The notes under the pieces were generated by a model that worked only from the letters and a program-made list of their open reading frames with translations, was not told where the DNA came from and made no database searches. Positions 13,870-39,045 of a stretch of DNA of 39,045 nt are shown piece by piece (within the stretch, counting starts at the first letter, position 1; each line of letters starts with the position of its first letter). Source of the DNA: Guillardia theta CCMP2712 (taxonomy: Eukaryota > Protista > Cryptophyta); the NCBI RefSeq assembly GCF_000315625.1, contig NW_005434568.1, positions 218,360 to 257,404 of the forward strand, written 5' to 3'. A program made the translations under genes and the position numbers.

Positions 13870-14110
13870 TCACTCCCGCTCCCTGAGCAAAGGAGGTTGA
13901 CGTGCTGCTTGCATCGAGATGAGGAGGAGCGAGCTGGAGGCTATGGGCGGGAAGCTAGAGGAGGCGGAGCACAGATTGCGCTGGAGACGCTGAGGCTGTA
14001 TGGATTTCAGCTACGATATTGTTGTCAAATGGGAGGAATCGCTCGGAGGAGTGGAGCAACCAACACCGAATTATTCGATTCAAGAATTAAAACGTTCATC
14101 ACGAATATTC

Positions 14111-19392: not shown

Positions 19393-20496
19393 TCAGTCAT
19401 CGCTGCTCTGCGTTTGCATGTTTGAAAAGATTGCACCGAACTTCGAGCACAGGTCCAGCTGAAGGTGGTTCCGAAGTTCAGGGCCGTCCAGGCTTGCGAC
19501 AATCGCTTTCATGCTCAGAGCAAAGTGCTTCAAACCATGGCTTGTCCGATTTCCTATTTCTCTGGTTGTCCTCGACACGTCTTGAGGGTCCTTCCAGAGG
19601 TCATAGACGTAGGAGCTGATTGACTGTTTCAGCTCGAAGACAGGCATTGACCTCGAGTCCAGACAGAGCCCCCGTCTAGTGGTGAAACAGAGCTCGCTTA
19701 CCGTTGCGACATCCTCCAAAGAATCTCCTCTCCCAGCCATCGCAACGAAACGAGAGCGAAGTATCACATTTGACGAAAGGTCCAAAAGGAATGCCTGCTC
19801 TCCCTCTGCCTGCCAGCGCAACCCAGAGATGGGCAGCACGTTATCTTCTCCCAACTCCCCCTCGTTCTGCTTGGCAAACATTTTCCAATGGTCAATTGCG
19901 CTGGATGTTGTTCTCCTAGCTCGTTGTTGGAAGATTCTCGCAATCTCGGGATGAAGAGGTGGCAAGAGAACTTGCAGGTTCGGTCAGAGGAGTTACTAAC
20001 TGTCAGCGGAAAGCTGTTACACCTTGCCTTGCTTCTTCTTTGGCGACATCTCAGAAAGATATTCAGCTTTCCATCGTGGAAACTCCAAGACAGAGATGAG
20101 ATAGCAGAAGATTGCAACAAGATCCTCCTGCACGCCCTCCGAGCTGTGCTGGCGTCCCTCACAGATGGCTTCGAAAAGTCCAGAGAATAGGATGCTTCCA
20201 ACAGCAAAGTTTGCCGGCTCGAGATGGTAGAGCCCTGCAACAATGCTTGCCAAGTCATTAGGCGCTGCTGTTGACGTGAGAAGTCCTGCAACATGAAGGT
20301 GCTCGGCCATGAACGTCCAAGCGAAAACATGCTGCTTGGTCATCAAGGTGGCTGCTTCAGCAGTCGAGGCAGTTGGACGCAGGGAGAGGAAGCGACCCTG
20401 CAGGCGCTGATCGATGGTTAAGAGCAAGTCGGCTTGAAGGACAAGGCTCTTGACCTGAGCGAAGGAATGCAAGGAGGATGCAGATGTCGCGCTCAC
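19393..20496 (-). CDS. Hypothetical spliced protein or gene fragment (copy B, shorter C-terminus)
   Basis: Duplicate of 12691-13869 with a 25-codon deletion near the C-terminus (190 vs 215 aa ORF). Confidence 0.35.
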
Positions 20497-20737
20497 TCAC
20501 TCCCGCTCCCTGAGCAAAGGAGGTTGACGTGCTGCTTGCATCGAGATGAGGAGGAGCGAGCTGGAGGCTATGGGCGGGAAGCTAGAGGAGGCGGAGCACA
20601 GATTGCGCTGGAGACGCTGAGGCTGTATGGATTTCAGCTACGATATTGTTGTCAAGTGGGAGGAATCGCTCGGAGGAGTGGAGCAACCAACACCGAATTA
20701 TTCGATTCAAGAATTAAAACGTTCATCACGAATATTC

Positions 20738-23517
20738 TCACGTCTCAAGTGCACCACTATCTGCCACCTTGCACTGTTGACCATAGAATGGCATTGTCTG
20801 ACTTCCAATCTCCACAATCATGAGCACCCTTTTGCGCAGGATCTTCTCCACCATCCTTTCATCTACAGAATCTTCGCCTTGCTTTCTCTTGTTTGTTGGT
20901 CGGCGGAACGTAGACGCGGTCCAGGTTTGTTTACCTTTCCTTTCAAGATGCAGCACCAGCCACTCGGTGCCATCATACCTCGAGTTCATAAAAATTTCAA
21001 TGTTAAATGACATCTCGGCAACCATGAATACGTTGACGTCCAGGTTATGTGAAAGCAGACCTGTGATATAGTTGGACGACGTATTCTGCACAAGAGAATT
21101 GGCCGAACGATTCTTGAATTCTGCTCCTCCTCTCCACATGCTTGGGAAGGAAGCTGGCCCAGCGAAAGTACCGTCCCTGCCTTCCTTATCCTTGTTACGC
21201 GCGTAGGAGCCCAAGACTGCCGAAAGGGAATGCTCAATCTCGCTCTCCCTTACAGGGACCAGATTGCACATGCACGATGTCAGCATCTCAACGAAGCTTT
21301 CTTTGTTTGCAACAGAAGCAAGAATATCATCCACTTTCCTCTCGTCTTTCATACCGCAATGAAAAGCGAAGTTCTTCAAGAGATCCTGAGGGGGAGACCA
21401 GCTGCTGATCATTATAACTACTGCCCCAAACGACTCTAGCAGATTCCCATCTCGCTTGCACGCATCCCTGCTCAGAGAATCTTGCCCGATCCTCTGATCC
21501 AACTGAATCTTCTGCAAGACCTGAAGTGCTGATGCATGAGAGAAAGGATTGCCCCCTCCCACACAAGCAACTGTCGTGATTGGATCAAGAACTGCAGAAG
21601 TGAACCTCGATGTCAGCTCTGAAAGAAAAGTACCCTTCAGCGCAGGCTTCCCGTCCTTAAGTTCGAGTAGAACGGTTGCCTGCTCACTATTTCGGGGTGG
21701 CGGATCATTGCCCCATACATTCAAAAGAGCAAACCCCTGGGAGATGTGCAACTGAGAAAGAGGTTCACGCGCAGCAATCTGAAACATGCAGTAGATAGAC
21801 TCTTGTCTCAATCTTGGTTTTGCCGTAGCGATCAACTGCCTCAGCCTTTCCGAGACACTTTGTATAAGCATGTGTGGTTTGGCTTCTTCTGACACTTGGC
21901 CAAGCTCGCCCAAGAAAAGGGAGCAAATCCATGGGTTTACGTGGTCCAGTAACTCGGGTACCTGTGCCTCTCCGAAAATCCTATTCATGACCTCTTCAGA
22001 AGCATCTGAGGGCAGGATATATGGAGGCAGCGAGCGATGTGTGAAGCAGTACATTCTTCGAACCTTATCCCGAGTGTATTGAGAGCTTTGGGAGACCTTG
22101 CCGAAATTCATGACCATTGTGTTCGTGCCCAACAGGATGCAGTTAATTCTTGAGTTGATCAATATTCTCCTCAACAGAACAATCTTCGCAATCACTGAGA
22201 ATATGCACGTTTCTTCATGCTGAGGAGGAATCACCTCATCCACGAGTACCCAGCGTCGTCTTTTCCAATTCTGAGCGTCTTTTACAGATACCGGAGCCCA
22301 GGTAGTCTCCTCGGCCCACAGGAAGGCGAGGACCCCCAGCACATGCCATTTCCTTCCATCCGTAGCGAAATCAATTTCCAAAACATCCAAAGGAGCAGTC
22401 CCCTGAGATCCGGCATGACGCTTTGCCAACAAACAAAGATCGCACTCCATCGCTTTGTTCATCAGTTGCGTGATCTGTTGTACTGGATTGTAAATATCTT
22501 GCACTGCCTCTAGCCTCTGCGAAGGATTGAAGAGAAAATAGATGCTTACATCTGCATTCCGGACAAAAAAATCAACGGCGCTAAGTGACTTACCACACCC
22601 AGAGCAAGCCTCAATCATGCACAAGTAAGGATCTTGATCAAGTTTGGCCTTCTCAACTATTCGGTCTATCGGGTTCAAGCTGCTGAATTTCTCGCTGGGT
22701 CGCACCCGTGAGGATCCCGAATTCCATGCAAAGTCAAGAGAGGCGTGAATGATTTCCTTCAACTGTGTCAAAACCTCATTCAAATCGATGCTTTTGGCGA
22801 TATTGTTCAAAACTAGCAATCAAATGAGAACAAAGCATTCGGGCTGGCGTAAAGACTCACCTGAAAGAAACTTTTCTTCTCCTCCATCTGATCGATGCGA
22901 AATCAGTGCATAAGATGCAATATTGTATTCTCTGGTGCAACGAGCAACATCATTCGGTCCTGCCTTTGCCAGCGACGCTTTCGCAGTTGCAACTGACAAT
23001 TCGAGCTTTGCCTCCGTGCATCTATAATTAGCCTCCGCCTTCTTCTTCTCGTCTCCTTCGAGCCTGGCCAGTTCAAGCTCTGTATTCCTCACATCCACAA
23101 GAGCCTCCGCTTTCTTCGTGTCTCTCCTTCGAGCCTGGCCAGTTCAAGCTCTGCATTCCTCACTTTCACAAGAGCCGTTGCTTCCCCCATCTTATCCCCT
23201 TCATTCCTCACTTTCACAAGAGCCGTTGCTTCCCCCATCTTATCCCCTTTGATCCCGGCCAAGTCACACTCTTCCTGCCAGACCTGCTTACGTGCTTCCA
23301 CCCTCTTCTTTTCGTCTCCTTCGAGCCTGGCAACAGCAAGCTTGGCAGACAAGAGCTTCATATTAGCCTCTGCTGTCCTTCTTATATCCCCGCTCAGCTC
23401 AGCCTGATCAAGCTCTGCTTCCCTCACCGCTACCAAATCCCGTGCCGCTTTCTTCTCCGCACCCTTGGTGAGAAGCTCCTGCCTTGCCTGTTCGGCAAGG
23501 CCTGATGTTTGTTCCAT
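20738..23517 (-). pseudogene. Crinkler/RHS-type NTPase-REase gene copy B, frameshifted within the N-terminal repeats
   Basis: The 693-aa portion is identical to copy A and has the same intron (22813-22860). The repeat region has a duplication plus a deletion that put ORFs 23089-23526 and 22820-23098 in different frames. Confidence 0.7.
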
Positions 23518-24094
23518 CGCCATCACCTACAAACCAAGAGAGGATGGTGAGATAGAGAGGATACCTGCGGGCAACTAATGATATTGGGTACACTTTTTCC
23601 GAACTCTCATCTTTTGGGTAAATTTTACAACTAATTTTAAGATATGAAAAGAACCGGTCATATTCCACTCTATACTACCCGTGTAAAACCAGCCGTTCCG
23701 TTTCACAAACAAGGGACCACCCGTCATCTTGACTAGAAGTGAAAGGGTGAAATAAAAATATTGTATAAAAAAGCTGACAACATACAAATACATATAAACA
23801 TCCCAATACCTGATACCCAGTAGTAAAACTATACAGCACGAGTGGGTCAAAAACGGGGAGCAGATAGGGGTGGGCAACTTTATCCCACATCCCCTCATTG
23901 ACCGGGCCCAGACCAACTTTCTGCCCCGACAGCTGCCCCGACAGGCTTCTTTGACTCCTGGATGGTTACTAGTTAGCAACTCCGCCGGCTGCCTGGCGAC
24001 TCCCGTGGTAACCCCGCATCCTGCCTGACGCCGGAGTAAACTCATGACCGTACCTCCGGGAACTTGAATCCGCTCGGACTGCTGACTGGCGAGT

Positions 24095-27987: not shown

Positions 27988-28013
27988 TTAGGGTTTAGGG
28001 TTTAAGGTTTAGG
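27988..28013 (+). repeat. Interstitial telomeric repeat (TTTAGGG)n, tract 1
   Basis: ttagggtttagggtttaaggtttagg. Confidence 0.9.
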
Positions 28014-28043
28014 AGGCGCCGTTATTTTCGGCAGCATGGCTCC

Positions 28044-30146
28044 TTGCCAGGTGTAGGGGAAGCCGCCAGGGCGCCAAGGAAGCTGCAAGCGAGAGGTTTG
28101 TATACTTCAAATAGCTTTCTAAGTATGGTTCTTCAGTATGATGAAAATGTTCGCAACCTGCTGTATCGGAGATCATGCCAATACACGCAGAGCGGACTTG
28201 TGGATGCCTCTGTCCTCGAAGCTGATCTCGTCGAGAGGGTGAAGAGCTTCGCGAAGCGTTATCCGAACAGCAGGACAGCCCAGGCTTGCAAGGCTGTGGA
28301 GGGATGCACCCCCGACGCTATCGCAGAAGCCATCCGCTCGACATGTCAGCAGGCACGACGTGAGCTTCTACAAGAAGCAATGACTGGATGGAGTGACGCA
28401 TCCAGAGAATGGTTTATGCAGCAGATTGAAGAAGCCAAGAAGGAGAAGGTCGAGACATACACCGCCTCAGCAGGCAACGAGGTGACTTCCTTCATCTCCA
28501 TGACTCTCCTGGGCATCTCCTCGGTGTATGTCAACCATGAAGAGAAGTTGAAGAAGAAATTCGAAGAGATCGGACTGATCGTAGACTCAGTGCAAGAGAG
28601 TAAAGCAATCATGTGGAAGGCTCCGTATAGACCCGAGATACTGAGTGCTGAGGAGATCCCGGTGACTGTTTCCTTCCTCCGCAATGCACAAGCGGAGAAG
28701 CTCTGGCAGGGAAGAGAGGACTTCGCGATCGATGGTCGCAAGTTCACAGCTGTACATGTGAGCATCGTGCACGATCGATCTTTCAAGATTCGAGCCAAGA
28801 GAGGACCCTGGGGCAAAGGGGGCAGCTTGGCAGAGCTGACCCACCTGTTAACCTTGGGCGGCATGACAACGGCTGAGATAGCTGCCGTCTATCGCTATCA
28901 GCTGCTGCGCCAGTCCCTTGCAGCGGTCCAACTCCAGCCGCTGGCAGGCATGCTGGTCGCTGGGGCGCCAGGACAGCAAGTCCACAAAGGCTTAGGTCAG
29001 AAAGGCTTCGTCGCTGTAGGGGCCAACGTCATCTGGAGACAGAGGGAGGTGGAGTGGATCGTCTCCTCGAGCTGCCCAGAGGCGAATGATACAGCATTTC
29101 GAGCTTTCCGAGAGAGCGAAGCGATGGAGGGAGTACACCTGACTCTGTTCAGCGAGGACCCGAAGATCAGAGAGGCGCTCGCAGTCGAGTTGACAGCTGA
29201 TCGCTTTGTGTCCAGAAATAAGTTGAAGAAGGCATCAAGGATGCAGAAGAAGGCAGGCGGCAAGGACGGCAAGGAGATCAAGATCATCATCAAGTCGACG
29301 GCGGCATCTGGTCGCTTCACGAGGAAGGAGATGGAGGGGCTGTGCAACGGCGGCAACACGTCCATCGCAAGAGTCAAGAGAGTGCTGTTGGAGATCGCTA
29401 ACAGGCTCGAGATCAAAGTTGAAGGCATCGACATGGAGGAGGATTTGAACACCAAGTCCTGGAACGGGTCCAAGCTATGCATCCTCCTCGGCTCCACGGA
29501 GGATGCTCGATGCATGATGAAGGAGCTGCCCTTCTATCTCGAAGGCGCAGCCACCAAGCTCGAAGCAGTCGGCTTCGACAAGGAGCCTGAGGCGGCTGAT
29601 CAGCGGGGCACCAGCGACGCAGCGCAGCGACAGGAGGAAAGCGAGGGAGAGTGGCTGGAGTTTACAGACCTGGAGAGGATCACAATGGAGGCAGCATCTC
29701 CGTCAAGCCAAGAGGACATGCAGCTCGTCAGCGAGCTGTCAGCAGTCATCGAAGATGCAGCTTCTTTGAACGAGGCGGGGACGAGCGAGCCGATCAAGCT
29801 GGTCCTGGACAAGGCCGTTGGCAACCTCCACGACACGTTCTACTCTCCGGGGAGCCTGGAGTTCATGTCGCTGGGAGAGTGGGCGAAGACGCCAGAGGAG
29901 CAGGGAGTGGGACGCAACGCGCTCAAGGAGAAGCTGGGGAAGTGGCTGCAGAGCAAGCGCTGGACTCGCGTGCAAGGAGAGAGCAAGAAGGCAAGGAGGG
30001 GCAGCGCGTTCTCGCCACGGGCAACGGCAGCTGCTGAGCTTGAGCAGGAGGCGGAGAGCGACGACATAGAGCGTCGATCTCTTAGCTTCCTGTTCATAGC
30101 ACTGAGTAAATTCGCACTGAGATGCATGTGCTGGCCTGCTCGCTGA
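28044..30146 (+). CDS. ~700-aa ORF of unknown function (putative ORF1/Gag-like protein of the telomeric element)
   Basis: Long open frame. First in-frame ATG at 28125. No RT (YxDD), APE or CCHC motif recognised. A 2-nt indel relative to copy 2 changes the C-terminus. Confidence 0.7.
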   Translation: MPGVGEAARAPRKLQARGLYTSNSFLSMVLQYDENVRNLLYRRSCQYTQSGLVDASVLEADLVERVKSFAKRYPNSRTAQACKAVEGCTPDAIAEAIRSTCQQARRELLQEAMTGWSDASREWFMQQIEEAKKEKVETYTASAGNEVTSFISMTLLGISSVYVNHEEKLKKKFEEIGLIVDSVQESKAIMWKAPYRPEILSAEEIPVTVSFLRNAQAEKLWQGREDFAIDGRKFTAVHVSIVHDRSFKIRAKRGPWGKGGSLAELTHLLTLGGMTTAEIAAVYRYQLLRQSLAAVQLQPLAGMLVAGAPGQQVHKGLGQKGFVAVGANVIWRQREVEWIVSSSCPEANDTAFRAFRESEAMEGVHLTLFSEDPKIREALAVELTADRFVSRNKLKKASRMQKKAGGKDGKEIKIIIKSTAASGRFTRKEMEGLCNGGNTSIARVKRVLLEIANRLEIKVEGIDMEEDLNTKSWNGSKLCILLGSTEDARCMMKELPFYLEGAATKLEAVGFDKEPEAADQRGTSDAAQRQEESEGEWLEFTDLERITMEAASPSSQEDMQLVSELSAVIEDAASLNEAGTSEPIKLVLDKAVGNLHDTFYSPGSLEFMSLGEWAKTPEEQGVGRNALKEKLGKWLQSKRWTRVQGESKKARRGSAFSPRATAAAELEQEAESDDIERRSLSFLFIALSKFALRCMCWPAR

Positions 30147-30300
30147 AGGTGGACACGAAGGACCGACTGCGGGTGGAGATGAGGGAAGATGGCGAAGAAG
30201 AGGAAGACATGGAGGAAGAGCAAGGCGAGGGCGAGGAAGAAGACGGGGCGAGCCCGTACCGAGCTTGAGCTGAGCTCAAGGTAAGGAGCAAAGGTAGGAG

Positions 30301-30452
30301 GCGACCGAAGGCCAAGGTGAGGAGAGGCAACTCTCCTGACTGAGGCTGAGGAAGCTGAATGGAGGAGGAGTAGGTGGCGACCGAAGGCCAAGGTGAGGAG
30401 AGGCAACTCTCCTGACTGAGGCTGAGGAAGCTGAATGGAGGTAGAGTAGGTG
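30301..30452 (+). repeat. 76-bp tandem repeat x2 (element 3' region)
   Basis: gcgaccgaaggccaaggtg starts at 30301 and 30377. Confidence 0.9.
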
Positions 30453-31438
30453 CCTTGAAGCTGTATGGTCTTGCTCATCAGACTTGATATTCCTCTTTCC
30501 ATAAGCGATCAGCCTCTTGACTTGACTTTCGCAGTAGGGCTGTGCATGGTACTGAAAGGTTCTCCTCAGCGCCCATCAGCACTGATGTGCCTGGCGACTT
30601 GGGACCTCCTTCATTTCTGCAGCATCATTTCATAACTTCGATCGAAGGTATGTCTTCATCGTCTGCTTCTTCGTCTCGCGAAGGCTTGACGCTCTAAGCT
30701 GCCTTTCATTTCTTCAACTCTGCTGTAGAGTTGCTTCGTGTCATCATATCGCCATCGTGAGATCGTGGCATGCAATGAGGCTTCAATGGGACGTCTCCCT
30801 TCCTCGGTCTTCACAACCTTCAAGCTTTCATCTGCCGTGCTCTAGGCTTGCCGCTTCAATCATCGCGGTGCTTGACCAGTGGAATCATGAGGTAATTCCT
30901 CTCCTCACTGTTGGCCACGTACAGGCTTTGAGGTTGGATTGAAAACAGCTCTTGTCACTTATGACATTCAGAGCGACTTTGATCAGGACTGATCCCTCCA
31001 TCATCGAGATTTTCTCGCTGTCATGTCACCCCTCAGCTTCTTTGCCACACTCATCATCATGGTGGGAGAGCTATCTGGTGGCCTCGTCGTCATCTTGTGC
31101 GACTCCTGGCTCTGCTCGGGGGATCCCTGTGACTCGTCCATGTCACATGACATAGGGATGATGCGAGGCTCGATGCTGATGTCATCATCAGATGTTCTCA
31201 GAGGTTCAGCCTGTCATGAAGTTCAGTATTCAGGTAGATATGATATTCCCTGATTTTGATTGTTCATTTAGTGAACCCTCCCTGACTGTCTCTGGTGTCG
31301 AACAGATGACCTCAGGCTGAAGTGGGTCCCCTGTGACTTCGCATCATCCATCTCCCTCCCTGACGAGGTACAGGGAGCTTGGCTAGCTTGACAAGGTCTT
31401 GCATGAAGCAGCGGCGGCGTAATGATGGCCAAACACTG

Positions 31439-31535
31439 TGACTCACCTGCTAACCTTGGGCGGCATGACAACGGCTGAGATAGCTGCCGTCTATCGCTAT
31501 CAGCTGCTGCGCCAGTCCCTTGCAGCGGTCCAACT
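31439..31535 (+). mobile_element. 97-bp internal fragment of the telomeric-element ORF
   Basis: Matches about 35957-36053 (copy-2 variant tcacctgcta). Abuts the Gypsy LTR. Confidence 0.85.
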
Positions 31536-31763
31536 TGATAGGATATGTTTACTGACTTCCTGTCTTTCTTAAGTAGGTGTCCTAGGCAGTCTCGTTTCTT
31601 AGGAAATTAGATTACTTACTTTTCTTTATCTCTAACGTTGATTTGGAGTAAATTGCCGTTGAATTGTGCATTACTGTCGCGCGCTTGTTCTTTGGTTTCT
31701 TGACGGGATCACTTCGTGTGTCAACGCTGGATCGAGAGATACTTGTAGGAAGTTTTCCTAACA
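31536..31763 (+). repeat. 5' LTR (228 bp)
   Basis: TG...CA ends with an imperfect terminal inverted repeat TGATAGGA/TCCTAACA, followed after 3 nt by TGG. Confidence 0.75.
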
Positions 31764-31766
31764 TTT

Positions 31767-31788
31767 TGGTACGCGAAGGCCTGGTTTT
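31767..31788 (+). promoter_or_regulatory. Candidate primer-binding site (resembles the complement of an initiator tRNA-Met 3' end)
   Basis: TGGTACGCGAAGGCCTGGTTTT lies immediately after the LTR. TGGTA...TGGTTT resembles an iMet PBS, but imperfectly. Confidence 0.5.
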
Positions 31789-31830
31789 CCTCTCGGAGTT
31801 GTTGTGTTGAAAGAAGTTGTTCAAGAAAAC

Positions 31831-33249
31831 ATGGATAGGACGAGCATTCAGTCAGGTAGCGTTGTCTCGGACTTCATGAGTCGAAGCATGTCGCGGTTGG
31901 GCAGCTTTGTGAAGGAGACATTGAATGGGTCAGCAGAGCCGCGCTTTCCTACGGTGACAGGCATGTCGCCGCAGTCACATGCGTACGATCCGTCGGAAAC
32001 TGTCATCCAGCAGGAGGCTGTCGTACGTGACGATAGTGTTGACAGTGGTCGTACAGTGCCTTCATGGTTGGAGAGTAGGGATGAAAACGAAAGAGATGGT
32101 CCCGCCCTTCCCTTGAAAGCCAGTTTTCGTGACATCGTGGAGGAAAACGAGCACCTACGCCGGACATGTAGAGAGCTCAGGTCTGTGGAACAGAGCAACA
32201 TGGATAAGATGCACAATCTCGTAAATGCACTCGCAGAATCCCAGAGAGAAGCTGATCGCAAACTCCAGGATCTTGTGAGGGCACTTGAGGAATCCCAGCG
32301 AGAGAACCGTAGGCTTGCCAAGGAGGCAGCGGAGATGCGTGTACTGCTTTGTGAGCGGGTTCGGGAACCCGAGGACAAGCCTTCCAAGCTTAAGCATGCG
32401 GAGAATGACGGTGGTCAGATTTGCAAGCTGGATCCGAAGTCATTGTTGCAGTACAATGGTGAGCAGACCATGGAGAGGTCGGTGGTCTCATGGCTCGGAT
32501 ATATCGAAGGCAGGTGTAAATTTCACCGTATAGCACGCCATCGATGGGTAGGAGCGGCCATCTCGGCGTTCGGGCCGGAGGTGCAGCTATGGTGGGCTAC
32601 ACTCCCGATGGCCGAGCAAGATCAGTTCTCAGCTGAGCATGGTGATTGGGAACAGTTTGTGGAGAAACTGTTGTTGAAATGGTTACCGTTCGAGTTTATT
32701 GAGAAACTTGAGCGTCATGTGCAGAAGCAGGCTAGGCAAGGGCCCAAGGAGTCCGTCGAGGCGTACACCGCAAGATTCCAGGCGATGGTTACACACCTGC
32801 AGGCGTGCTACCTTGTGTCCAAGAGACCTAGTGTTGCGCTAGGTAGCTGGGAACGCGTCTTTGTCGATGGGATTCAAATGGACTATGCGCGTGCCATGCT
32901 ACGGAAGGAATTGAGCATGCTGATGGAACGCGATGGTAAGACGTTTGGGATTACTTATCATGCGGAGCCGTCGGAGATGGGCAAGTATTTGCCGCAGTTG
33001 TATCGCGAAGCTCTTAATCTGCGTCAGAGACACCCACAAGACGGTCAGACGAGTCTTCATTTCACCCAAGCACAACCTCGTCATGAGGGCAAGCGGTCGG
33101 CTCCTACTCAGAGCGAGGACATGCAGGGCAAGGAGAAGAAGTTCGACAAGAAGAAGGTGAAGTGCTACAACTGTCAGAAGTTCGGTCACTTCAGAGACAA
33201 GTGCCCTCTCTTGTCGAGGTCTGAACAACCGTCAGCTTTAAACCAGTGA
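31831..33249 (+). CDS. gag: Retrotransposon Gag
   Basis: Capsid-like AISAFGPEVQLWW..WEQFVEKLLLKW and RQGPKESVEAYTARF. Zinc knuckle CYNCQKFGHFRDKC. Confidence 0.9.
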   Translation: MDRTSIQSGSVVSDFMSRSMSRLGSFVKETLNGSAEPRFPTVTGMSPQSHAYDPSETVIQQEAVVRDDSVDSGRTVPSWLESRDENERDGPALPLKASFRDIVEENEHLRRTCRELRSVEQSNMDKMHNLVNALAESQREADRKLQDLVRALEESQRENRRLAKEAAEMRVLLCERVREPEDKPSKLKHAENDGGQICKLDPKSLLQYNGEQTMERSVVSWLGYIEGRCKFHRIARHRWVGAAISAFGPEVQLWWATLPMAEQDQFSAEHGDWEQFVEKLLLKWLPFEFIEKLERHVQKQARQGPKESVEAYTARFQAMVTHLQACYLVSKRPSVALGSWERVFVDGIQMDYARAMLRKELSMLMERDGKTFGITYHAEPSEMGKYLPQLYREALNLRQRHPQDGQTSLHFTQAQPRHEGKRSAPTQSEDMQGKEKKFDKKKVKCYNCQKFGHFRDKCPLLSRSEQPSALNQ

Positions 33250-33333
33250 CGTCGGTTGCCGCGGAGGGCGCAATCGACGGGGGCACGGGTTTGCAGACTT
33301 CGAATGTTGTCTTCGACCCGGGCACACCTCCGC
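33237..33333 (+). promoter_or_regulatory. -1 programmed ribosomal frameshift signal (T TTA AAC + stem-loop/pseudoknot)
   Basis: Slippery heptamer at 33237-33243 in the gag frame, 6-nt spacer, and a 10-bp stem 33250-33259/33270-33279. Pol is in the -1 frame. Confidence 0.8.
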
Positions 33334-35111
33334 CAGAAGATCCTAGGGATGTTCGTCAATGTCGTATCACCGTTGACTCTCACAGGATCAAAGCTCTACC
33401 TATGGTACCTGTGACCTTTCGGTTCGGGGATCAATCCATAGTTCTTAATGCATTGCTCGATACAGCTGCTGAAGAGTCGTTTATCAGCACGAAGGCAGTG
33501 CGCAAATTTGGTCTGTTGGTCACGGATGCAGAAGTTCGCAAACGAGTTATCATGGCCGACGGGACGTGTAGGTTGTCTGATATGGTTTTCCAGACAAAAT
33601 TGGGCGTAGGCTCCAGTTTCAAGAGTAGTGGGTCGTTCTACATGCTTGACTTGCCGCATGCGGACATGATCCTCTCATGGGAATGGATGCGTGCGAACAA
33701 GATCGTGATTGATGCGGGTCACCCCAGAGTCTTTGCCAAGTGGCGCAAGAAGATGGTCGAGCTTCCGTTACTTGTTTGCCCGACAAACAAGCAATTCGGG
33801 GCTGCGGACGCCTCGCTGTGTCAGGTACTTTCTTACACTGAGGCAGTGAGAGACCTCAAGCAGAACGATTCGGAATGGTACGTGGTACATTTGTGCAACC
33901 TGTTGGAGATGGCTCAGCCGACAGATGGTGCCACGAGTCTCGAGCAGAAGGCTGCCGAGACGATCATGGAAGATTATTCGGATGTCATTCGTGACGACAT
34001 TCCCAGTGACGTTGTTCTTGACCGGTCCTTCAAGGCGACGATTCGACTCAAGGATAACGTTGAGGCGGTGCAAAAGAAACCTTACCCTGTGCCACTCGCG
34101 TTGGAGGAGGAGTTGAAAGCGAATCTTGCCTTCTTGTTGGAGCGTGGGATCATTGAACCTTCGACGTCTGAGTTTACGTCTCCCGTAATCTTCACAAAAA
34201 AGTCTGATGGTACATTGCGTTTTTGCACTGATATGAGGTTCGTTAACAGCTTGATCCGGAATGATAACTTTCCATTGCCGTTGGTGATGGAGCTGATAGA
34301 ACGAGTGGGTCGAAAGATCATGGAAGAGAGGGCGCGTTATGCTTCAGAACCTGGGGCACGGTTGTGGATCAGCTCACTCGACCTGGCGAAAAGTTTTTGG
34401 CAACTTGAGTTGGACGCCGCGTCGAGGAAGTACACCTGTTTCATCACGAAGTTTGGGAAATATCAGTATCGGAGGATTCCTTTCGGCTTGGTAGATTCGG
34501 CAAATCAATTTCAGAAATTTCTCGAGAGTGTTCTTCAAGGTCTCGAGAATTGCCTGAGCTATATCGACGATGTTTGCTTGATCAGTTATGGGAGCTTGGA
34601 GAGACATGAGCGTTTGCTTCGACAGGCTCTGGATCGCTTTCGTAAAGAGCAGTTGTTTGTCAAGAAGTCGAAATGTAAGCTGTTTCACTCTGAAATTGAT
34701 TTCCTCGGTTTCCACATCAGCGAGGCAGGCGTCTCGACACAAGAGAAAAAGGTACAAGCGATTGTGGATCGTACGGCACCTCAGACAGTGAAGGAACTCA
34801 AGTCGTTTTTGGGAGTGTTGAACTTTTACAGGAAGTATGTGCCGGATTACGCAGCGTTAGCACTTCCGCTAACGAATCTCCTACGCAAGAATGTGAAGTT
34901 TTGTTGGGATGACGCGCAAGAAGCGGCCTTTCAGGAGCTGAAGAAGCGTTTGATATCAGCCCCTGTTTTAAGGTACTTCAACCCAGCGTTAGCTACTTGC
35001 GTGTTGGTCGATGCGAGCGACTACGCCATCGGTGCTGTCTTAACACAACAGCATGGCGAAGATCTGTTGCCTGTCGCCTTCTTTAGCAAGCGTCTCAACA
35101 GTGTAGGGTAG
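33246..35111 (+). CDS. pol: Pol polyprotein (aspartic protease, reverse transcriptase, partial RNase H), truncated
   Basis: ALLDTAAEESFI (PR). LRFCTDMR, LDLAKSFWQ, IPFGL and YIDD (RT). VDASDYAIGAVL (RH). The stop codon comes from the telomere tract. Confidence 0.92.
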   Translation: MTSVAAEGAIDGGTGLQTSNVVFDPGTPPPEDPRDVRQCRITVDSHRIKALPMVPVTFRFGDQSIVLNALLDTAAEESFISTKAVRKFGLLVTDAEVRKRVIMADGTCRLSDMVFQTKLGVGSSFKSSGSFYMLDLPHADMILSWEWMRANKIVIDAGHPRVFAKWRKKMVELPLLVCPTNKQFGAADASLCQVLSYTEAVRDLKQNDSEWYVVHLCNLLEMAQPTDGATSLEQKAAETIMEDYSDVIRDDIPSDVVLDRSFKATIRLKDNVEAVQKKPYPVPLALEEELKANLAFLLERGIIEPSTSEFTSPVIFTKKSDGTLRFCTDMRFVNSLIRNDNFPLPLVMELIERVGRKIMEERARYASEPGARLWISSLDLAKSFWQLELDAASRKYTCFITKFGKYQYRRIPFGLVDSANQFQKFLESVLQGLENCLSYIDDVCLISYGSLERHERLLRQALDRFRKEQLFVKKSKCKLFHSEIDFLGFHISEAGVSTQEKKVQAIVDRTAPQTVKELKSFLGVLNFYRKYVPDYAALALPLTNLLRKNVKFCWDDAQEAAFQELKKRLISAPVLRYFNPALATCVLVDASDYAIGAVLTQQHGEDLLPVAFFSKRLNSVG

Positions 35112-35133
35112 GGTTTAGGGTTTAGGGTTTAGG
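35104..35133 (+). repeat. Interstitial telomeric repeat tract 2
   Basis: tagggtagggtttagggtttagggtttagg. Confidence 0.92.
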
Positions 35134-35217
35134 AGCGCCGGTTATTTCAGGCACCATGGCTGCACGCGTGGTGTAGGGGAAGCCGCCAGGGCGCCAAGGA
35201 AGCTGCAAGCGAGAGGT

Positions 35218-37392
35218 TTGTATACTTCAAATAGCTTTCTAAGTATGGTTCTTCAGTATGATGAAAATGTTCGCAACCTGCTGTATCGGAGATCATGCCA
35301 ATACACGCAGAGCGGACTTGTGGATGCCTCTGTCCTCGAAGCTGATCTCGTCGAGAGGGTGAAGAGCTTCGCGAAGCGTTATCCGAACAGCAGGACAGCC
35401 CAGGCTTGCAAGGCTGTGGAGGGATGCACCCCCGACGCTATCGCAGAAGCCATCCGCTCGACATGTCAGCAGGCACGACGTGAGCTTCTGCAAGAAGCGA
35501 TGACTGGATGGAGTGACGCATCCAGAGAGTGGTTTATGCAGCAGATTGAAGAAGCCAAGAAGGAGAAGGTCGAGACATACACCGCCTCAGCAGGCAACGA
35601 GGTGACTTCCTTCATCTCCATGACTCTCCTGGGCATCTCCTCGGTGTATGTCAACCATGAAGAAAAGCTGAAGAAGAAATTTGAAGAGATCGGACTGATC
35701 GTAGACTCAGTGCAAGAGAGTAAAGCAATCATGTGGAAGGCTCCGTATAGACCCGAGATAGCGAGTGCTGAGGAGATCCCGGTGACTGTTTCCTTCCTCC
35801 GCAATGCACAAGCGGAGAAGCTCTGGCAGGGAAGAGAGGACTTCGCGATCGATGGTCGCAAGTTCACAGCTGTACATGTGAGCATCGTGCACGATCGATC
35901 TTTCAAGATTCGAGCCAAGAGAGGACCCTGGGGCAAAGGGGGCAGCTTGGCAGAGCTGACTCACCTGCTAACCTTGGGCGGCATGACAACGGCTGAGATA
36001 GCTGCCGTCTATCGCTATCAGCTGCTGCGCCAGTCCCTTGCAGCGGTCCAACTCCAGCCGCTGGCAGGCATGCTGGTCGCTGGGGCGCCAGGACAGCAAG
36101 TCCACAAAGGCTTAGGTCAGAAAGGCTTCATCGCTGTAGGGGCCAACGTCATCTGGAGACAGAGGGAGGTGGAGTGGATCGTCTCCTCGAGCTGCCCAGA
36201 GGCGAATGATACAGCATTTCGAGCTTTCCGAGAGAGCGAAGCGATGGAGGGAGTACACCTGACTCTGTTCAGCGAGGACCCGAAGATCAGAGAGGCGCTC
36301 GCAGTCGAGTTGACAGCTGATCGCTTTGTGTCCAGAAATAAGTTGAAGAAGGCATCAAGGATGCAGAAGAAGGCAGGCGGCAAGGACGGCAAGGAGATCA
36401 AGATCATCATCAAGTCGACGGCGGCATCTGGTCGCTTCACGAGGAAGGAGATGGAGGGGCTGTGCAACGGCGGCAACACGTCTATCGCAAGAGTCAAGAG
36501 AGTCTTGTTGGAGATCGCTAACAGGCTCGAGATCAACGTTGAAGGCATCGACATGGAGGAGGATTTGAACACCAAGTCCTGGAACGGGTCCAAGCTATGC
36601 ATCCTCCTCGGCTCCACGGAGGATGCTCGACGCATGATGAAGGAGCTGCCCTTCTATCTCGAAGGCGCAGCAACCAAGCTCGAAGCAGTCGGCTTCGACA
36701 AGGAGCCTGACTCTGAGGCGGCTGGTCAGCGGGGCACCAGCGACGCAGCGCAGCGACAGGAGGAGAGCGAGGGAGAGTGGCTGGAGTTTACAGACCTGGA
36801 GAGGATCACAATGGAGGCAGCATCTCCGTCAAGCCAAGAGGACATGCAGCTCGTCAGCGAGCTGTCAGCAGTCATCGAAGATGCAGCTTCTTTGAACGAG
36901 GCAGGGACGAGCGAGCCGATCAAGCTGGTCCTGGACAAGGCCGTTGGCAACCTCCACGACACGTTCTACTCTCCGGGGAGCCTGGAGTTCATGGCGCTGG
37001 GAGAGTGGGCGAAGATGCCAGAGGAGCAGGGAGTGGGACGCAACGCGCTCAAGGAGAAGCTGGGGAAGTGGCTGCAGAGCAAGCGCTGGACTCGCGTGCA
37101 AGGAGAGAGCAAGAAGGCAAGGAGGGGCAGCGCGTTCTCGCCACGGGCAACGGCAGCTGCTGAGCTTGAGCAGGAGGCGGAGAGCGACGACATAGAGCGT
37201 CGATCTCTTAGCTTCCTGTTCATCGCACTGAGTAAATTCGCAGAGATGCATGTGCTGGCCTGCTCGCTGAAGGTGGACAAGAAGGACCGACTGCGAGTGG
37301 AGATGAGGGAAGATGGCGAAGAAGAGGAAGACATGGAGGAAGAGCAAGGCGAGGGCGAGGAAGAAGACGGGGCGAGCCCGTACCGAGCTTGA
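35218..37392 (+). CDS. 724-aa ORF of unknown function (putative ORF1/Gag-like), acidic C-terminus
   Basis: Near-identical to 28044-30146. First in-frame ATG at 35245. Confidence 0.72.
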   Translation: MYTSNSFLSMVLQYDENVRNLLYRRSCQYTQSGLVDASVLEADLVERVKSFAKRYPNSRTAQACKAVEGCTPDAIAEAIRSTCQQARRELLQEAMTGWSDASREWFMQQIEEAKKEKVETYTASAGNEVTSFISMTLLGISSVYVNHEEKLKKKFEEIGLIVDSVQESKAIMWKAPYRPEIASAEEIPVTVSFLRNAQAEKLWQGREDFAIDGRKFTAVHVSIVHDRSFKIRAKRGPWGKGGSLAELTHLLTLGGMTTAEIAAVYRYQLLRQSLAAVQLQPLAGMLVAGAPGQQVHKGLGQKGFIAVGANVIWRQREVEWIVSSSCPEANDTAFRAFRESEAMEGVHLTLFSEDPKIREALAVELTADRFVSRNKLKKASRMQKKAGGKDGKEIKIIIKSTAASGRFTRKEMEGLCNGGNTSIARVKRVLLEIANRLEINVEGIDMEEDLNTKSWNGSKLCILLGSTEDARRMMKELPFYLEGAATKLEAVGFDKEPDSEAAGQRGTSDAAQRQEESEGEWLEFTDLERITMEAASPSSQEDMQLVSELSAVIEDAASLNEAGTSEPIKLVLDKAVGNLHDTFYSPGSLEFMALGEWAKMPEEQGVGRNALKEKLGKWLQSKRWTRVQGESKKARRGSAFSPRATAAAELEQEAESDDIERRSLSFLFIALSKFAEMHVLACSLKVDKKDRLRVEMREDGEEEEDMEEEQGEGEEEDGASPYRA

Positions 37393-37424
37393 GCTGAGCT
37401 CAAGGTAAGGAGAGAAGGTAGGAG

Positions 37425-37631
37425 GCGACCGAAGGCCAAGGTGAGGAGAGGCAACTCTCCTGACTGAAGCTGAGGAAGCTGAATGGAGGAGGAGTAGGTG
37501 GCGACCGAAGGCCAAGGTGAGGAGAGGCAACTCTTCTGACTGAGGCTGAGGAAGCTGAATGGAGGTAGAGTAGGTGGTGACCGAAGGCCAAGGTGAGGAG
37601 AGGCAACTCTCCTGACTGAGGCTGAGGAAGC
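37425..37631 (+). repeat. 76-bp tandem repeat x~2.7
   Basis: Units start at 37425, 37501 and 37577. Confidence 0.9.
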
Positions 37632-37809
37632 CAAGAGAAGACAGCAGAAGTAGAGAGTAGAAAGACGCCTCAGAAGCAGGGTTCGCATTGTAGGCCGTGT
37701 ACTCCCAGTGCTCGAGCGCCTCTTTAGACTAGGATCAAATTGCACAAGCCCACAACGAGGCCGAGCAACATTCTAGCATTCTAATAAACTCACATAATAA
37801 TAATAATAA

Positions 37810-37852
37810 TAGGGTTTAGGGTTTAGGGTTTAGGGTTTAGGGTTTAGGGTTT
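37810..37852 (+). repeat. Interstitial telomeric repeat tract 3
   Basis: TAGGG(TTTAGGG)5TTT. Confidence 0.95.
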
Positions 37853-38640
37853 TTCCTGGCAGGTTCCTTATTTCCTGGCAGGTTCCTTATTTCCTGGCAG
37901 GTTCCTTATTTCCTGGCAGGTTCCTTATTTCCTGGCAGGTTCCTTATTTCCTGGCAGGTTCCTTATTTCCTGGCAGGTTCCTTATTTCCTGGCAGGTTCC
38001 TTATTTCCTGGCAGGTTCCTTATTTCCTGGCAGGTTCCTTATTTCCTGGCAGGTTCCTTATTTCCTGGCAGGTTCCTTATTTCCTGGCAGGTTCCTTATT
38101 TCCTGGCAGGTTCCTTATTTCCTGGCAGGTTCCTTATTTCCTGGCAGGTTCCTTATTTCCTGGCAGGTTCCTTATTTCCTGGCAGGTTCCTTATTTCCTG
38201 GCAGGTTCCTTATTTCCTGGCAGGTTCCTTATTTCCTGGCAGGTTCCTTATTTCCTGGCAGGTTCCTTATTTCCTGGCAGGTTCCTTATTTCCTGGCAGG
38301 TTCCTTATTTCCTGGCAGGTTCCTTATTTCCTGGCAGGTTCCTTATTTCCTGGCAGGTTCCTTATTTCCTGGCAGGTTCCTTATTTCCTGGCAGGTTCCT
38401 TATTTCCTGGCAGGTTCCTTATTTCCTGGCAGGTTCCTTATTTCCTGGCAGGTTCCTTATTTCCTGGCAGGTTCCTTATTTCCTGGCAGGTTCCTTATTT
38501 CCTGGCAGGTTCCTTATTTCCTGGCAGGTTCCTTATTTCCTGGCAGGTTCCTTATTTCCTGGCAGGTTCCTTATTTCCTGGCAGGTTCCTTATTTCCTGG
38601 CAGGTTCCTTATTTCCTGGCAGGTTCCTTATTTCCTGGCA
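37852..38640 (+). repeat. Perfect 19-bp tandem array (TTTCCTGGCAGGTTCCTTA)x41 + 10 nt
   Basis: The period is exact (37852+41x19=38631). No variant units were seen. Confidence 0.97.
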
Positions 38641-38709
38641 TGCAGATTTGCGGTACCCCTGCGCTGGTGGAGTAAGAGCCGCCAGGAACGACGGAAGCTT
38701 GGGAAACCA

Positions 38710-39039
38710 TTGAGAATGCTCCGAAGCATGTGGCCAATATCTATTGTGAACCCTGACGAGATCGTGCAGTACCGTACCTCCAGCTACCTCAAGAGGCAGA
38801 CGGAAACTGGAACGATGCCGTCACCAGCTGAGCTTGTGCGACGACTGGATGACTTCGCAAGGCAGAATCCCAAAAGCAGGACGAGCAAAGCTCTGAAAGC
38901 CAAAGAGATATCCTTGGAAGCCTTAGCCGAAGCCATCAGTCACACATGCAGCTTTGCTGAACCTTCACCACTGGAGAGTCTGAAAGGTCTCGGGCAGTGG
39001 GGTGATGATGCCAGGCAGTGGTACCTGTCCGAATTCTAG
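38710..39039 (+). CDS. Divergent homologue of the telomeric-element ORF (copy 3), N-terminal part, probable premature stop
   Basis: LVRRLDDFARQNPKSRTSKALKAK-EISLEALAEAISHTC...GQWGDDARQWYL aligns with LVERVKSFAKRYPNSRTAQACKAVEGCTPDAIAEAIRSTC...TGWSDASREWFM. Confidence 0.7.
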   Translation: MRMLRSMWPISIVNPDEIVQYRTSSYLKRQTETGTMPSPAELVRRLDDFARQNPKSRTSKALKAKEISLEALAEAISHTCSFAEPSPLESLKGLGQWGDDARQWYLSEF

Positions 39040-39045
39040 CAGACA

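What the first reader, a model, noticed from the sequence alone, without database searches (positions are those of the whole stretch)
27988..39045. Array of unrecognised single-ORF elements inserted specifically in TTTAGGG telomeric repeats
Seen: three same-orientation elements. Copies 1 and 2 start immediately after a (TTTAGGG)n tract in the same TTTAGG|AG register; copy 3 follows its tract via the 19-bp array. Copy 2 is bounded by telomere repeats on both sides and ends AATAAA..(TAA)5|TAGGGTTTAGGG. It encodes only a ~720-aa protein with no RT or endonuclease motif. Known: telomere-specific non-LTR elements exist (Bombyx SART/TRAS, Drosophila HeT-A/TART, Magnaporthe MoTeR, Athena PLEs). Sense strand = G-rich strand with the tail distal is the SART1 polarity. 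It is opposite to HeT-A and Athena end-priming, so insertion would need a nick in the C-rich strand. Inference: a non-autonomous, ORF1-only (HeT-A-like content, SART-like polarity) telomere-targeting retroelement family, mobilised in trans, that builds the subtelomere of this organism. I do not recognise it as a described family.
Basis: partly seen in the sequence, partly recalled or inferred. Interest (0 to 1): 0.88.

Follow-up and report, generated by a model that had tools for sequence, protein, structure and literature searches.

The report
Telomere-repeat-specific retrotransposon array, Guillardia theta
The last 11 kb of this window is the end of a chromosome of the cryptophyte alga Guillardia theta, built from head-to-tail copies of a retrotransposon family that inserts only into TTTAGGG telomere repeats. 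Most copies carry just a first gene (ORF1) and probably borrow the copying enzyme of a longer relative, much as HeT-A depends on its relatives in fruit-fly telomeres.

Summary
The window is Guillardia theta nuclear DNA. From 27988 to the window end it is an array of three same-sense elements, each preceded by G-strand telomere repeats.

Ten other G. theta scaffold ends and one metagenome contig show the same design:
- (TTTAGGG)n, then a 19-20-nt 5' unit repeated 1-41 times, then a 5'UTR and a ~700-aa ORF;
- a 3'UTR ending TAATAAACTCA plus an (ATA)n or (CTA)n tail, followed by GGGTTTAGGG.

All 18 intact 3' ends abut telomere repeats. The remaining evidence points to target-primed reverse transcription rather than plain segmental duplication:
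- 5'-truncated copies sit directly on telomere tracts.
- Tail lengths and junction registers vary between copies.
- Chimeric copies occur.
- ORF1 has dN/dS of 0.14-0.25.

The metagenome contig holds a full-length ~10.4-kb relative. There the ~700-aa protein is ORF1, followed by a 2,575-aa ORF2 with C48 peptidase, a probable APE, RT, CCHC and an R2-type restriction-like endonuclease. This is the published "cryptophyte Dualen" architecture.

Window copies 1 and 2 (A-type) are ORF1-only. Copy 3 belongs to the ORF1+ORF2 lineage. Polarity is SART-like. I found no paper describing the telomere specificity, the ORF1 or the ORF1-only lineages. I rate it a new variant of a known kind.

The parts
27988..28013 (+). 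Telomere tract (3.5 G-strand repeats, one variant) joining unique chromosomal DNA to the array
   Evidence: No family or telomere-like sequence lies upstream.
28014..30452 (+). Copy 1, A-type ORF1-only element. It has one 19-nt 5' unit (AGGCGCCGTTATTTTCGGC) and ORF1 at 28125-30146 with a 2-bp frameshifting insertion. It is truncated at its 3' end inside the 76-bp repeats (30294-30452).
   Evidence: 98% identical to copy 2. ORF1 aa 1-666 is 99% identical. Frameshift seen.
31439..31535 (+). Isolated 97-bp ORF1 fragment (aa 238-270) inside unassigned DNA at 30453-31803
   Evidence: 100% identical to copy 2 and to most A copies elsewhere. Origin unexplained.
31804..35108 (+). Ty3/gypsy LTR-retrotransposon gag (CCHC) and PR-RT-RNase H, cut off in RNase H. 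It is context for the array, not a family member.
   Evidence: Pfam Retrotrans_gag, zf-CCHC, RVT_1 (1.6e-26) and RT_RNaseH_2, with the RNase H match stopping at profile position 67/100.
35105..35133 (+). Telomere tract with an irregular start (TAGGGTAGGG, then regular repeats) that caps the broken gypsy element. Read as healing of a terminal truncation.
   Evidence: The rest of the gypsy element is absent downstream.
35134..37811 (+). Copy 2, a complete A-type ORF1-only element (2,678 bp). Features: 5' unit at 35134-35152, intact ORF1 at 35245-37392 (715 aa), 76-bp repeats x2.9 at 37409-37631, 3' motif TAATAAACTCAC at 37782-37793, tail (ATA)6 at 37794-37811.
   Evidence: dN/dS 0.15-0.19 against other A copies. 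The 3' motif is shared with the RT-bearing elements.
37812..37852 (+). Telomere tract GGG(TTTAGGG)5TTT between copies 2 and 3
37852..38640 (+). Amplified 5'-terminal unit of copy 3: the 19-nt unit TTTCCTGGCAGGTTCCTTA, 41.5 perfect copies
   Evidence: TRF. The same unit occurs about 4 times at the head of the C-type copy in L002. Homologous 19-20-nt units head every subfamily.
38641..39045 (+). Copy 3, C-type: 5'UTR and the first 107 codons of ORF1 (ATG at 38716), cut by the window end. This lineage carries ORF2 elsewhere.
   Evidence: 99.5% identical to L002 7341-7745. 88% aa identity to ORF1 of the full-length element in L012.

Best explanation
The region is the distal part of a G. theta chromosome end. 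It was built by repeated insertion of a non-LTR retrotransposon family that is specific for TTTAGGG telomere repeats.

The full-length form is about 10.4 kb and is seen in L012. Its order is:
- a 19-20-nt terminal unit and a conserved leader;
- ORF2, overlapping ORF1 in TAATG, with C48 peptidase, a probable AP-like endonuclease, RT, a CCHC zinc finger and an R2-type restriction-like endonuclease;
- a 3'UTR ending CTA-N5-TCTAATAAA(C/A)TC(A/G), then an (ATA)n or (CTA)n tail.

Window copies 1 and 2 belong to the abundant A lineage. It keeps the 5' unit, a diverged ORF1 and the terminal 3' motif, but has no ORF2.

Proposed mechanism (inferred):
1. Element RNA is bound by ORF1 protein.
2. An ORF2 protein supplied in trans recognises the shared 3' end.
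3. ORF2 nicks the C-rich strand inside a telomere tract, at or next to the TA of CCCTAAA.
4. The nicked strand primes reverse transcription on the (NUA)n tail. The sense strand therefore becomes continuous with the G-rich strand, with the tail distal.
5. Premature stops give 5'-truncated copies. Template switches give chimeras.
6. Telomerase keeps adding repeats distally. Terminal loss followed by healing leaves 3'-truncated copies capped by new repeats.

Iteration of these steps produces the head-to-tail array.
For: Shown:
- Organism and family: about 40 G. theta paralogues in subfamilies at roughly 90-100% and 50-60% identity to the query. Further lineages at about 30% identity turned up in the loci.
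- Location: ten independent G. theta scaffold ends carry arrays of the same design and outward polarity. L011 ends in GGGTTTA right after a tail.
- 3' ends: all 18 distinct intact 3' ends (17 at G. theta scaffold ends or in the window, plus L012) are followed by GGGTTT....
- 5' truncations placed directly on telomere tracts: L003 15942 and 16796, L005 11869, L002 11147, L009 12729. Because the 5' end is proximal, terminal erosion cannot explain these.
- 3'-truncated copies capped by telomere repeats: L002 4732 and 11098, L005 9864, L010 10046, L011 7642 and 9369, plus the gypsy element in the window.
- Junctions without telomere repeats that fit template switching. L008 11701 joins A ORF1 aa 569 to ORF2 aa 2365. 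L007 10669 joins B-like ORF1 aa 410 to ORF2 aa 2383. L002 9643 joins a 3'-truncated C copy to the exact start of an A 5' unit.
- Autonomous form in L012: Peptidase_C48 3e-10, Exo_endo_phos 9e-5, RVT_1 1e-28 and zf-RVT. Best PDB matches are R2 proteins at 5e-22.
- Endonuclease fold: the C-terminal 209 aa model (pLDDT 70.6) best matches the R2 proteins 9dou, 9nl3, 9nl2 and 8gh6, then PD-(D/E)xK endonucleases. D and E are invariant.
- G. theta itself holds ORF1 followed by the start of ORF2 (L002 21216-22082; L004 14453-14067), together with RT-containing (L009 only) and CCHC-RLE-containing pieces.
- The terminal 3' motif is shared by A, B and RT-bearing elements.
- ORF1 is under purifying selection, dN/dS 0.14-0.25. 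It is transcribed in G. theta and Hanusia phi (MMETSP-derived entries).
- The domain order equals the published cryptophyte Dualen (PMC5029228).
Against: - No retrotransposition event has been observed.
- No copy with an intact ORF2 was seen in the G. theta loci I could fetch. The L009 copy is 5'-truncated and lacks 122 aa of the RT. The intact one is on a metagenome contig of unknown, Guillardia-like origin.
- The APE call sits just under Pfam's cut-off (22.7 against 24.5 bits). No RNase H was detected.
- The nick site cannot be read unambiguously because of TA/AGG microhomology and the repetitive target.
- Recombination or break-induced replication surely also reshapes such arrays, and could explain some identical registers and the chimeras.
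- The function of ORF1 protein is unknown. Its AF2 model is poor (pLDDT 45) and gives only weak RRM-like fold matches at E of 1e-3 or worse.
- The window's own position in its scaffold was not established.
Confidence: 0.8

Rival explanations
1. The same retroelements, but integration does not depend on the element's endonucleases. Reverse transcription would be primed by C-strand 3'-OH ends that arise naturally at telomeres, such as lagging-strand or fill-in intermediates, or at damaged telomere tracts.
For: - Some elements follow the previous one after less than one repeat (GGGTTT only, L004 12326) or with no repeat at all (L002 7256 and 9643).
- Every G. theta ORF2 copy fetched is defective.
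- The arrays are strictly terminal.
Against: - The autonomous form keeps a restriction-like endonuclease with invariant catalytic-type D and E residues, and an AP-like domain. These would be dispensable under this model.
- SART, which has the same polarity, inserts by endonuclease nicking inside repeats (PMC7265360).
Confidence: 0.1
2. This is a subtelomeric host gene family, comparable to yeast Y'. It would be spread among chromosome ends only by recombination or break-induced replication. The interstitial telomere repeats would be relics of healing, and no RNA intermediate would be involved.
For: - Tandem same-sense units separated by short telomere tracts resemble Y' arrays.
- ORF1 is conserved.
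- MoTeR arrays are known to expand by break-induced replication (PMC7367193).
- The TTTAGG|AG register recurs.
Against: - 5'-truncated units with intact tails sit on telomere tracts at the proximal side.
- Tail length and junction register differ at every junction compared, and no two inter-element junctions are alike.
- The order of subfamilies differs at each end.
- The same protein is ORF1 of an RT-encoding element with the same termini.
Confidence: 0.06
3. The element is added to the chromosome end by end-priming, as in HeT-A or Athena. The G-strand overhang would prime on an RNA, which here would have to be antisense to ORF1.
For: - New elements are always distal-facing and bounded by telomerase repeats.
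- The 5' unit begins AG(G), which could pair with the telomere strand.
Against: - An AATAAA signal lies 12 nt before the tail on the ORF1 sense strand.
- Truncations remove the ORF1-proximal (5') end and never the tail end unless telomere-capped.
- Sense transcripts exist.
- Endonucleases are encoded.
Confidence: 0.03
4. The array is an assembly artefact: collapsed or chimeric repeats at scaffold ends.
For: - The Sanger-era draft has gaps inside some arrays.
- The 41.5 perfect 19-mers and the inverted junction in L004 could be mis-joins.
Against: - The same architecture, with copy-specific junctions, occurs at ten other scaffold ends and on an independent metagenome contig.
- Copies differ by point substitutions consistent with real paralogues.
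Confidence: 0.01

Closest known systems
[quoted passage not shown] 2016, PMC5029228)
   Same: The ORF2 domain order is C48 peptidase, AP-like endonuclease, RT, CCHC zinc finger, restriction-like endonuclease. ORF2 is very long (2,575 aa, against a 2,543-aa Tara ORF). The host group is the same.
   Different: - The published elements were rebuilt from transcriptomes. No insertion sites, ORF1 or non-autonomous derivatives were reported.
- No SET domain and no RNase H were detected here.
- Membership by RT phylogeny was not tested.
HeT-A / TAHRE / TART of Drosophila telomeres
   Same: An abundant Gag/ORF1-only element sits alongside a relative that also encodes RT (as HeT-A does with TAHRE). Both form head-to-tail terminal arrays, and the ORF1-only element is presumed to depend on RT supplied in trans.
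   Different: - Polarity is opposite: Drosophila elements attach by their 3' end, with the tail proximal.
- Drosophila has no telomerase repeats between elements.
- The Drosophila elements belong to the Jockey clade and have poly(A) tails.
- Here canonical TTTAGGG tracts separate the units.
SART1 (and TRAS1) of Bombyx mori
   Same: Both insert site-specifically inside telomere repeats. SART has the same polarity (sense strand is the G-rich strand; PMC7265360). It is bicistronic with a UAAUG stop-start overlap (the overlap is from memory).
   Different: SART is an R1-clade element with an AP-type endonuclease only and a poly(A) tail. No ORF1-only partner lineage is known to me, and it has no 5' tandem unit.
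MoTeR1/MoTeR2 (Magnaporthe) and FoTeR (Fusarium)
   Same: - The RT carries a restriction-like endonuclease.
- A non-autonomous partner shares the termini.
- Head-to-tail arrays are separated by 0.5 to more than 20 telomere repeats.
- 5' truncations, 5' variable-number tandem repeats and healing of terminal truncations all occur (PMC7367193, PMC12857005).
   Different: - The fungal elements have their 5' ends distal and their sense strand on the C-rich strand.
- They have a single ORF and belong to the CRE-like clade.
- MoTeR2's insert has no obvious function, whereas the A/B lineages here keep a selected 700-aa ORF1.
Yeast Y' elements
   Same: Same-sense subtelomeric units separated by short telomere tracts, each with a long ORF.
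   Different: Y' encodes a helicase and is amplified mainly by recombination. It has no tails, no 5' truncations and no RT-bearing relative.

Membership tests
Non-LTR (LINE-type) retrotransposon integrating by target-primed reverse transcription | Non-LTR-type RT encoded by the family | tested here: met
   RVT_1 at 1.2e-28 in L012 ORF2 and 6.8e-21 in L009. A FADD motif is present. Best PDB matches are R2 and LINE-1 ORF2p. The RT is not present in the window copies themselves.
Non-LTR (LINE-type) retrotransposon integrating by target-primed reverse transcription | Constant 3' end with a simple-repeat or A-rich tail, variable 5' truncation, no LTRs | tested here: met
   18 of 18 intact 3' ends share the motif plus an (ATA)n or (CTA)n tail. 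At least 5 copies are 5'-truncated on telomere tracts. No terminal repeats were found.
Dualen/RandI group | Restriction-like endonuclease after a CCHC motif at the C-terminus | tested here: met
   CCHC is present, with invariant D (x14) E, then a K-rich stretch. The AF2 model's best Foldseek matches are R2 proteins (E 4e-5, TM 0.54).
Dualen/RandI group | AP-like endonuclease in the same ORF | tested here: inconclusive
   Exo_endo_phos E 9.4e-5, 22.7 bits against a cut-off of 24.5, covering profile positions 2-202 of 225. There are faint L1-EN matches in PDB (E about 1).
Dualen/RandI group | RT groups with Dualen in a phylogeny; RNase H domain present | not tested
   No reference Dualen sequences were available in the tools. 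Pfam found no RNase H between the RT and the CCHC.
Cryptophyte Dualen (PMC5029228) | C48 peptidase upstream of APE-RT-CCHC-RLE | tested here: met
   Peptidase_C48 at 3.1e-10, aa 156-270 of ORF2.
SART/TRAS (R1 clade) | Insertion restricted to telomere repeats; SART polarity | tested here: met
   Polarity checked against PMC7265360.
SART/TRAS (R1 clade) | AP-endonuclease-only ORF2 of the R1 clade; poly(A) tail | tested here: not met
   A restriction-like endonuclease is present. Tails are (ATA)n or (CTA)n, never poly(A).
HeT-A/TART/TAHRE | Attachment to the chromosome end by the 3' end (tail proximal); no telomerase repeats | tested here: not met
   Tails are distal at all ten scaffold ends. TTTAGGG tracts lie between units.
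MoTeR/FoTeR (CRE-like telomeric elements) | 5' end nearest the chromosome end, sense strand on the C-rich strand, single ORF | tested here: not met
   Polarity is opposite and the full-length form is bicistronic. Compared with PMC7367193 and PMC12857005.
Penelope-like Athena (endonuclease-deficient telomeric elements) | PLE-type RT, no endonuclease, 3' end carrying reverse-complement telomere repeats | tested here: not met
   The RT is LINE/R2-like and endonucleases are present. The 3' end is (NTA)n.
Yeast Y'-type recombination-amplified subtelomeric gene | Helicase ORF; identical junctions inherited by recombination | tested here: not met
   There is no helicase or any other Pfam domain. All junctions differ.

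The most novel reading that the evidence does not exclude
The ORF1-only lineages are not mere parasites but have become part of chromosome-end maintenance in cryptophytes. They were found at every G. theta scaffold end examined (ends that were chosen because they carry a family member), their ORF1 is under purifying selection, and they are interleaved with telomerase repeats. On this reading they would supply end-protecting or end-lengthening sequence alongside telomerase. That would be a living intermediate between telomerase-only telomeres and the retrotransposon-only telomeres of Drosophila.
Probability: 0.12. Interest if true: 0.85.

Novelty: new variant of a known kind. Interest (0 to 1): 0.62.

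Why it matters
Telomere-specific retrotransposons are known from insects, fungi, Giardia, Chlorella and rotifers. Each case has informed how mobile elements and telomerase coexist. This would add an independent case in the cryptophytes.

It combines features not seen together before:
- a dual-endonuclease (Dualen-type) ORF2;
- SART-like polarity;
- a HeT-A/TAHRE-like split into ORF1-only and ORF1+ORF2 lineages;
- a terminal 19-20-nt unit that amplifies from 1 to more than 40 copies.

It also assigns a role, as retrotransposon ORF1, to about 40 annotated 'hypothetical proteins' of G. theta. And it explains why so many of that genome's scaffolds stop where they do.

G. theta is culturable. The predictions are therefore testable: C-strand nicking, RT initiation on the (NUA)n tail, and trans-mobilisation.

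Tried and rejected
- ORF1 function. Pfam gave nothing. A profile search of 1.84 billion representative proteins gave only family members and fragments. The AF2 model was poor (pLDDT 45). Its Foldseek matches were only weak multi-RRM proteins (best E 1.5e-3), which is a hint and not a result.
- ORF1 is unrelated to the 693-aa duplicated ORF upstream in the window and to the ORF2 pieces.
- I first took the 5.46-kb L009 element for the full-length autonomous partner, of single-ORF R2 type. L012 showed it is a 5'-truncated copy with an internal deletion, so I dropped that reading.
- L002:3-1733 has no RT hit because it lies downstream of the RT.
- Profile and single-sequence searches of the CCHC-RLE region against PDB sequences found nothing meaningful. 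Only the fold comparison did.
- RNAalifold on the 3'UTRs gave a weak long-range helix with compensatory changes between only two lineages (energy -2.3 kcal/mol). I do not claim it.
- I looked for older degenerate copies or telomere relics upstream of 27988 and found none.
- I could not locate the window's own scaffold. P0001 and P0002 turned out to be other ends.
- Literature searches for cryptophyte or Guillardia telomeric retroelements found none.

Full report
**1. What is in the window**

- Unique DNA ends at 27987 and is followed by 3.5 G-strand telomere repeats.
- Copy 1 spans 28014-30452 and copy 2 spans 35134-37811. They are 98% identical over 2.47 kb. Both begin in the register TTTAGG|AG.
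- Copy 2 is complete. It has one 19-nt 5' unit, a 715-aa ORF (35245-37392), 2.9 copies of a 76-bp repeat and the end TAATAAACTCAC(ATA)6. GGG(TTTAGGG)5 follows.
- Next come 41.5 perfect copies of a 19-nt unit and the start of a divergent third copy, which the window end cuts.
- TTTAGGGTTTAGGG occurs five times on the + strand, never on the - strand and never in shuffles.
- Copy 1 breaks off inside its 76-bp repeats and has a 2-bp frameshifting insertion.
- Between copies 1 and 2 lies a Ty3/gypsy gag-pol that stops in the middle of RNase H. It is capped by an irregular telomere tract. This is the signature of terminal breakage and healing, with copy 2 lying distal to the healed break.
- Upstream of 27988 there is ordinary genic DNA with no relic of the family.

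**2. Organism and family**

The ORF has about 40 paralogues annotated as hypothetical proteins of Guillardia theta CCMP2712. They fall into subfamilies at roughly 90-100% and 50-60% identity to the query, and there is a 37% relative in the cryptophyte Hanusia phi. Further lineages at about 30% identity turned up in the loci.

A profile search of 1.84 billion representative proteins returned 56 hits, all family members or fragments. Some are G. theta and H. phi transcript-derived entries. Pfam finds nothing.

**3. Related loci**

I fetched ten further G. theta loci that carry family members. They lie at ten different scaffold ends, and two of the fetched loci (L002, L009) overlap at one end. 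Each family member lies within about 35 kb of its scaffold end, and the arrays point outward. One scaffold ends in GGGTTTA immediately after a tail.

The common anatomy is:

- (TTTAGGG)n of less than 1 to about 38 repeats;
- a subfamily-specific 19-20-nt unit repeated 1 to about 21 times (41.5 in the window);
- a conserved leader, then the ORF;
- a 3'UTR ending CTA-N5-TCTAATAAA(C/A)TC(A/G), then (ATA)2-9 or (CTA)4-8;
- GGGTTTAGGG.

**4. Evidence for an RNA intermediate**

- All 18 distinct intact 3' ends (17 at G. theta scaffold ends or in the window, plus the metagenome contig L012) abut GGGTTT.
- At least five copies are 5'-truncated and joined directly to a proximal telomere tract. Because the 5' end is proximal, erosion of the chromosome end cannot make these. 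Incomplete reverse transcription can.
- At least six family copies are 3'-truncated and capped by telomere repeats, as expected from terminal loss and healing.
- No two inter-element junctions are alike in tract length, register or tail length. The order of subfamilies differs at every end.
- Four junctions lack telomere repeats and join different elements at internal points, or at the exact first base of a 5' unit. This fits template switching.
- ORF1 is under purifying selection, with dN/dS 0.14-0.25, even among copies with dS 0.008-0.03.

**5. The RT-bearing relative**

Weak zf-RVT hits next to some tails led to a 5.46-kb element in L009. It has an RVT_1 domain (6.8e-21) and its best PDB matches are R2 proteins.

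Its C-terminal 209 aa has a CCHC motif and invariant D and E residues. The AF2 model (pLDDT 70.6) best matches the R2 proteins 9dou, 9nl3, 9nl2 and 8gh6, and then PD-(D/E)xK endonucleases.

A metagenome contig (L012, JGI 3300014720) then gave the full-length form. Its order is:

- the tail of an A-type element and three telomere repeats;
- one 5' unit and ORF1 (713 aa, 88% identical to the window's copy 3);
- ORF2, overlapping ORF1 in TAATG (2,575 aa), with Peptidase_C48, a probable AP-like endonuclease (E 9e-5, just under cut-off), RVT_1 (1e-28) and CCHC plus the restriction-like endonuclease;
- the same 3'UTR as the L009 element, then (ATA)4 and at least 15 telomere repeats.

The L009 element is a defective derivative. 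It has 15 nt of a 5' unit joined to ORF2 aa 780, and it has a 122-aa deletion in the RT. G. theta itself has ORF1 followed by the start of ORF2 in L002 and L004, and fragments of the AP-like region in L008 and L011.

The A, B and RT-bearing elements share the last ~30 nt before the tail.

**6. Interpretation**

The ~700-aa protein is the ORF1 of a telomere-repeat-specific non-LTR retrotransposon. Window copies 1 and 2 belong to an ORF1-only lineage. Copy 3 belongs to the bicistronic lineage.

The steps are inferred, not shown:

1. ORF2 protein supplied in trans recognises the shared 3' end.
2. It nicks the C-rich strand.
3. It primes on the (NUA)n tail.
4. Telomerase, erosion and healing act between insertions.

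I rate the overall model at 0.8. Trans-mobilisation by this particular ORF2 I rate at about 0.65.

**7. Comparison with known systems**

- The ORF2 domain order is that of the 'cryptophyte Dualen' reported from transcriptomes, which has C48 peptidase, APE, RT, RNase H, CCHC and RLE (PMC5029228). The dual endonucleases define Dualen (PMC4640811, PMC9977147). RNase H was not detected here and the RT phylogeny was not run.
- In behaviour the system resembles MoTeR1/MoTeR2 and FoTeR. Shared features are a restriction-like endonuclease, a partner sharing the termini, arrays separated by short telomere tracts and 5' tandem repeats. The polarity is opposite (PMC7367193, PMC12857005).
- The polarity equals that of SART, which is AP-type and polyadenylated (PMC7265360).
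- The split into ORF1-only and ORF1+ORF2 elements parallels HeT-A and TAHRE, but the mode of attachment differs.
- I found no paper describing telomeric retroelements in cryptophytes. Repbase could not be consulted.

**8. Verdict**

This is a new variant of a known kind, of solid interest to specialists in mobile DNA and telomeres.

Noticed in passing
window 12860-17378 and 19487-23926: A 4.5-kb tandem duplication at 97.8% identity. Each copy carries a 693-aa ORF on the - strand (14111-16192 and 20738-22819) with no Pfam hit, plus 71-72-bp internal repeats. It is unrelated to ORF1.
   Followed up: partly
window 12322-12411: A 90-bp stretch 82% identical to ORF1 nt 216-296 of the A-type element, 15 kb proximal to the array. 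It is too short to show at protein level.
   Followed up: partly
window 30453-31803: 1.35 kb between truncated copy 1 and the gypsy gag matches nothing in the fetched loci, except an embedded 97-bp ORF1 fragment (31439-31535) that is 100% identical to copy 2. It may be the gypsy LTR or leader.
   Followed up: partly
window 4651-6387: ORF with tetratricopeptide (TPR) repeats, an ordinary host gene.
   Followed up: no
L002 11099-11146: A 48-bp telomere tract replaces about 55 bp inside an A-type ORF1 (aa 368 | aa 383). Either two truncated copies abut by chance at almost the same point, or telomere repeats were inserted at an internal break.
   Followed up: no
L004 12667: A head-on inverted junction of two A-type copies, followed by an inverted block of elements about 27 kb from the scaffold end. 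This could be an end fusion, an inversion or a misassembly.
   Followed up: no
L012 2440-2445; L002 about 21187: The ORF1 stop and the ORF2 start overlap as TAATG. From memory, this is the same stop-start design reported for SART1.
   Followed up: no
P0013 (EukProt 'Heterocapsa arctica'): A 461-aa protein filed under a dinoflagellate is 100% identical to the G. theta ORF1. This suggests cryptophyte contamination of that transcriptome, for example from prey.
   Followed up: no
L003 386-1054, 2116-2784, 8110-8778: Three copies of a 223-aa ORF lie proximal to the array. A diverged ORF2 fragment (aa about 1854-2161, 36-60% identity) runs into the telomere tract at 9757.
   Followed up: no
L011 about 7000-7720: Variant telomere repeats (TTTTGGG and TGTAGGG) inside interstitial tracts.
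   Followed up: no
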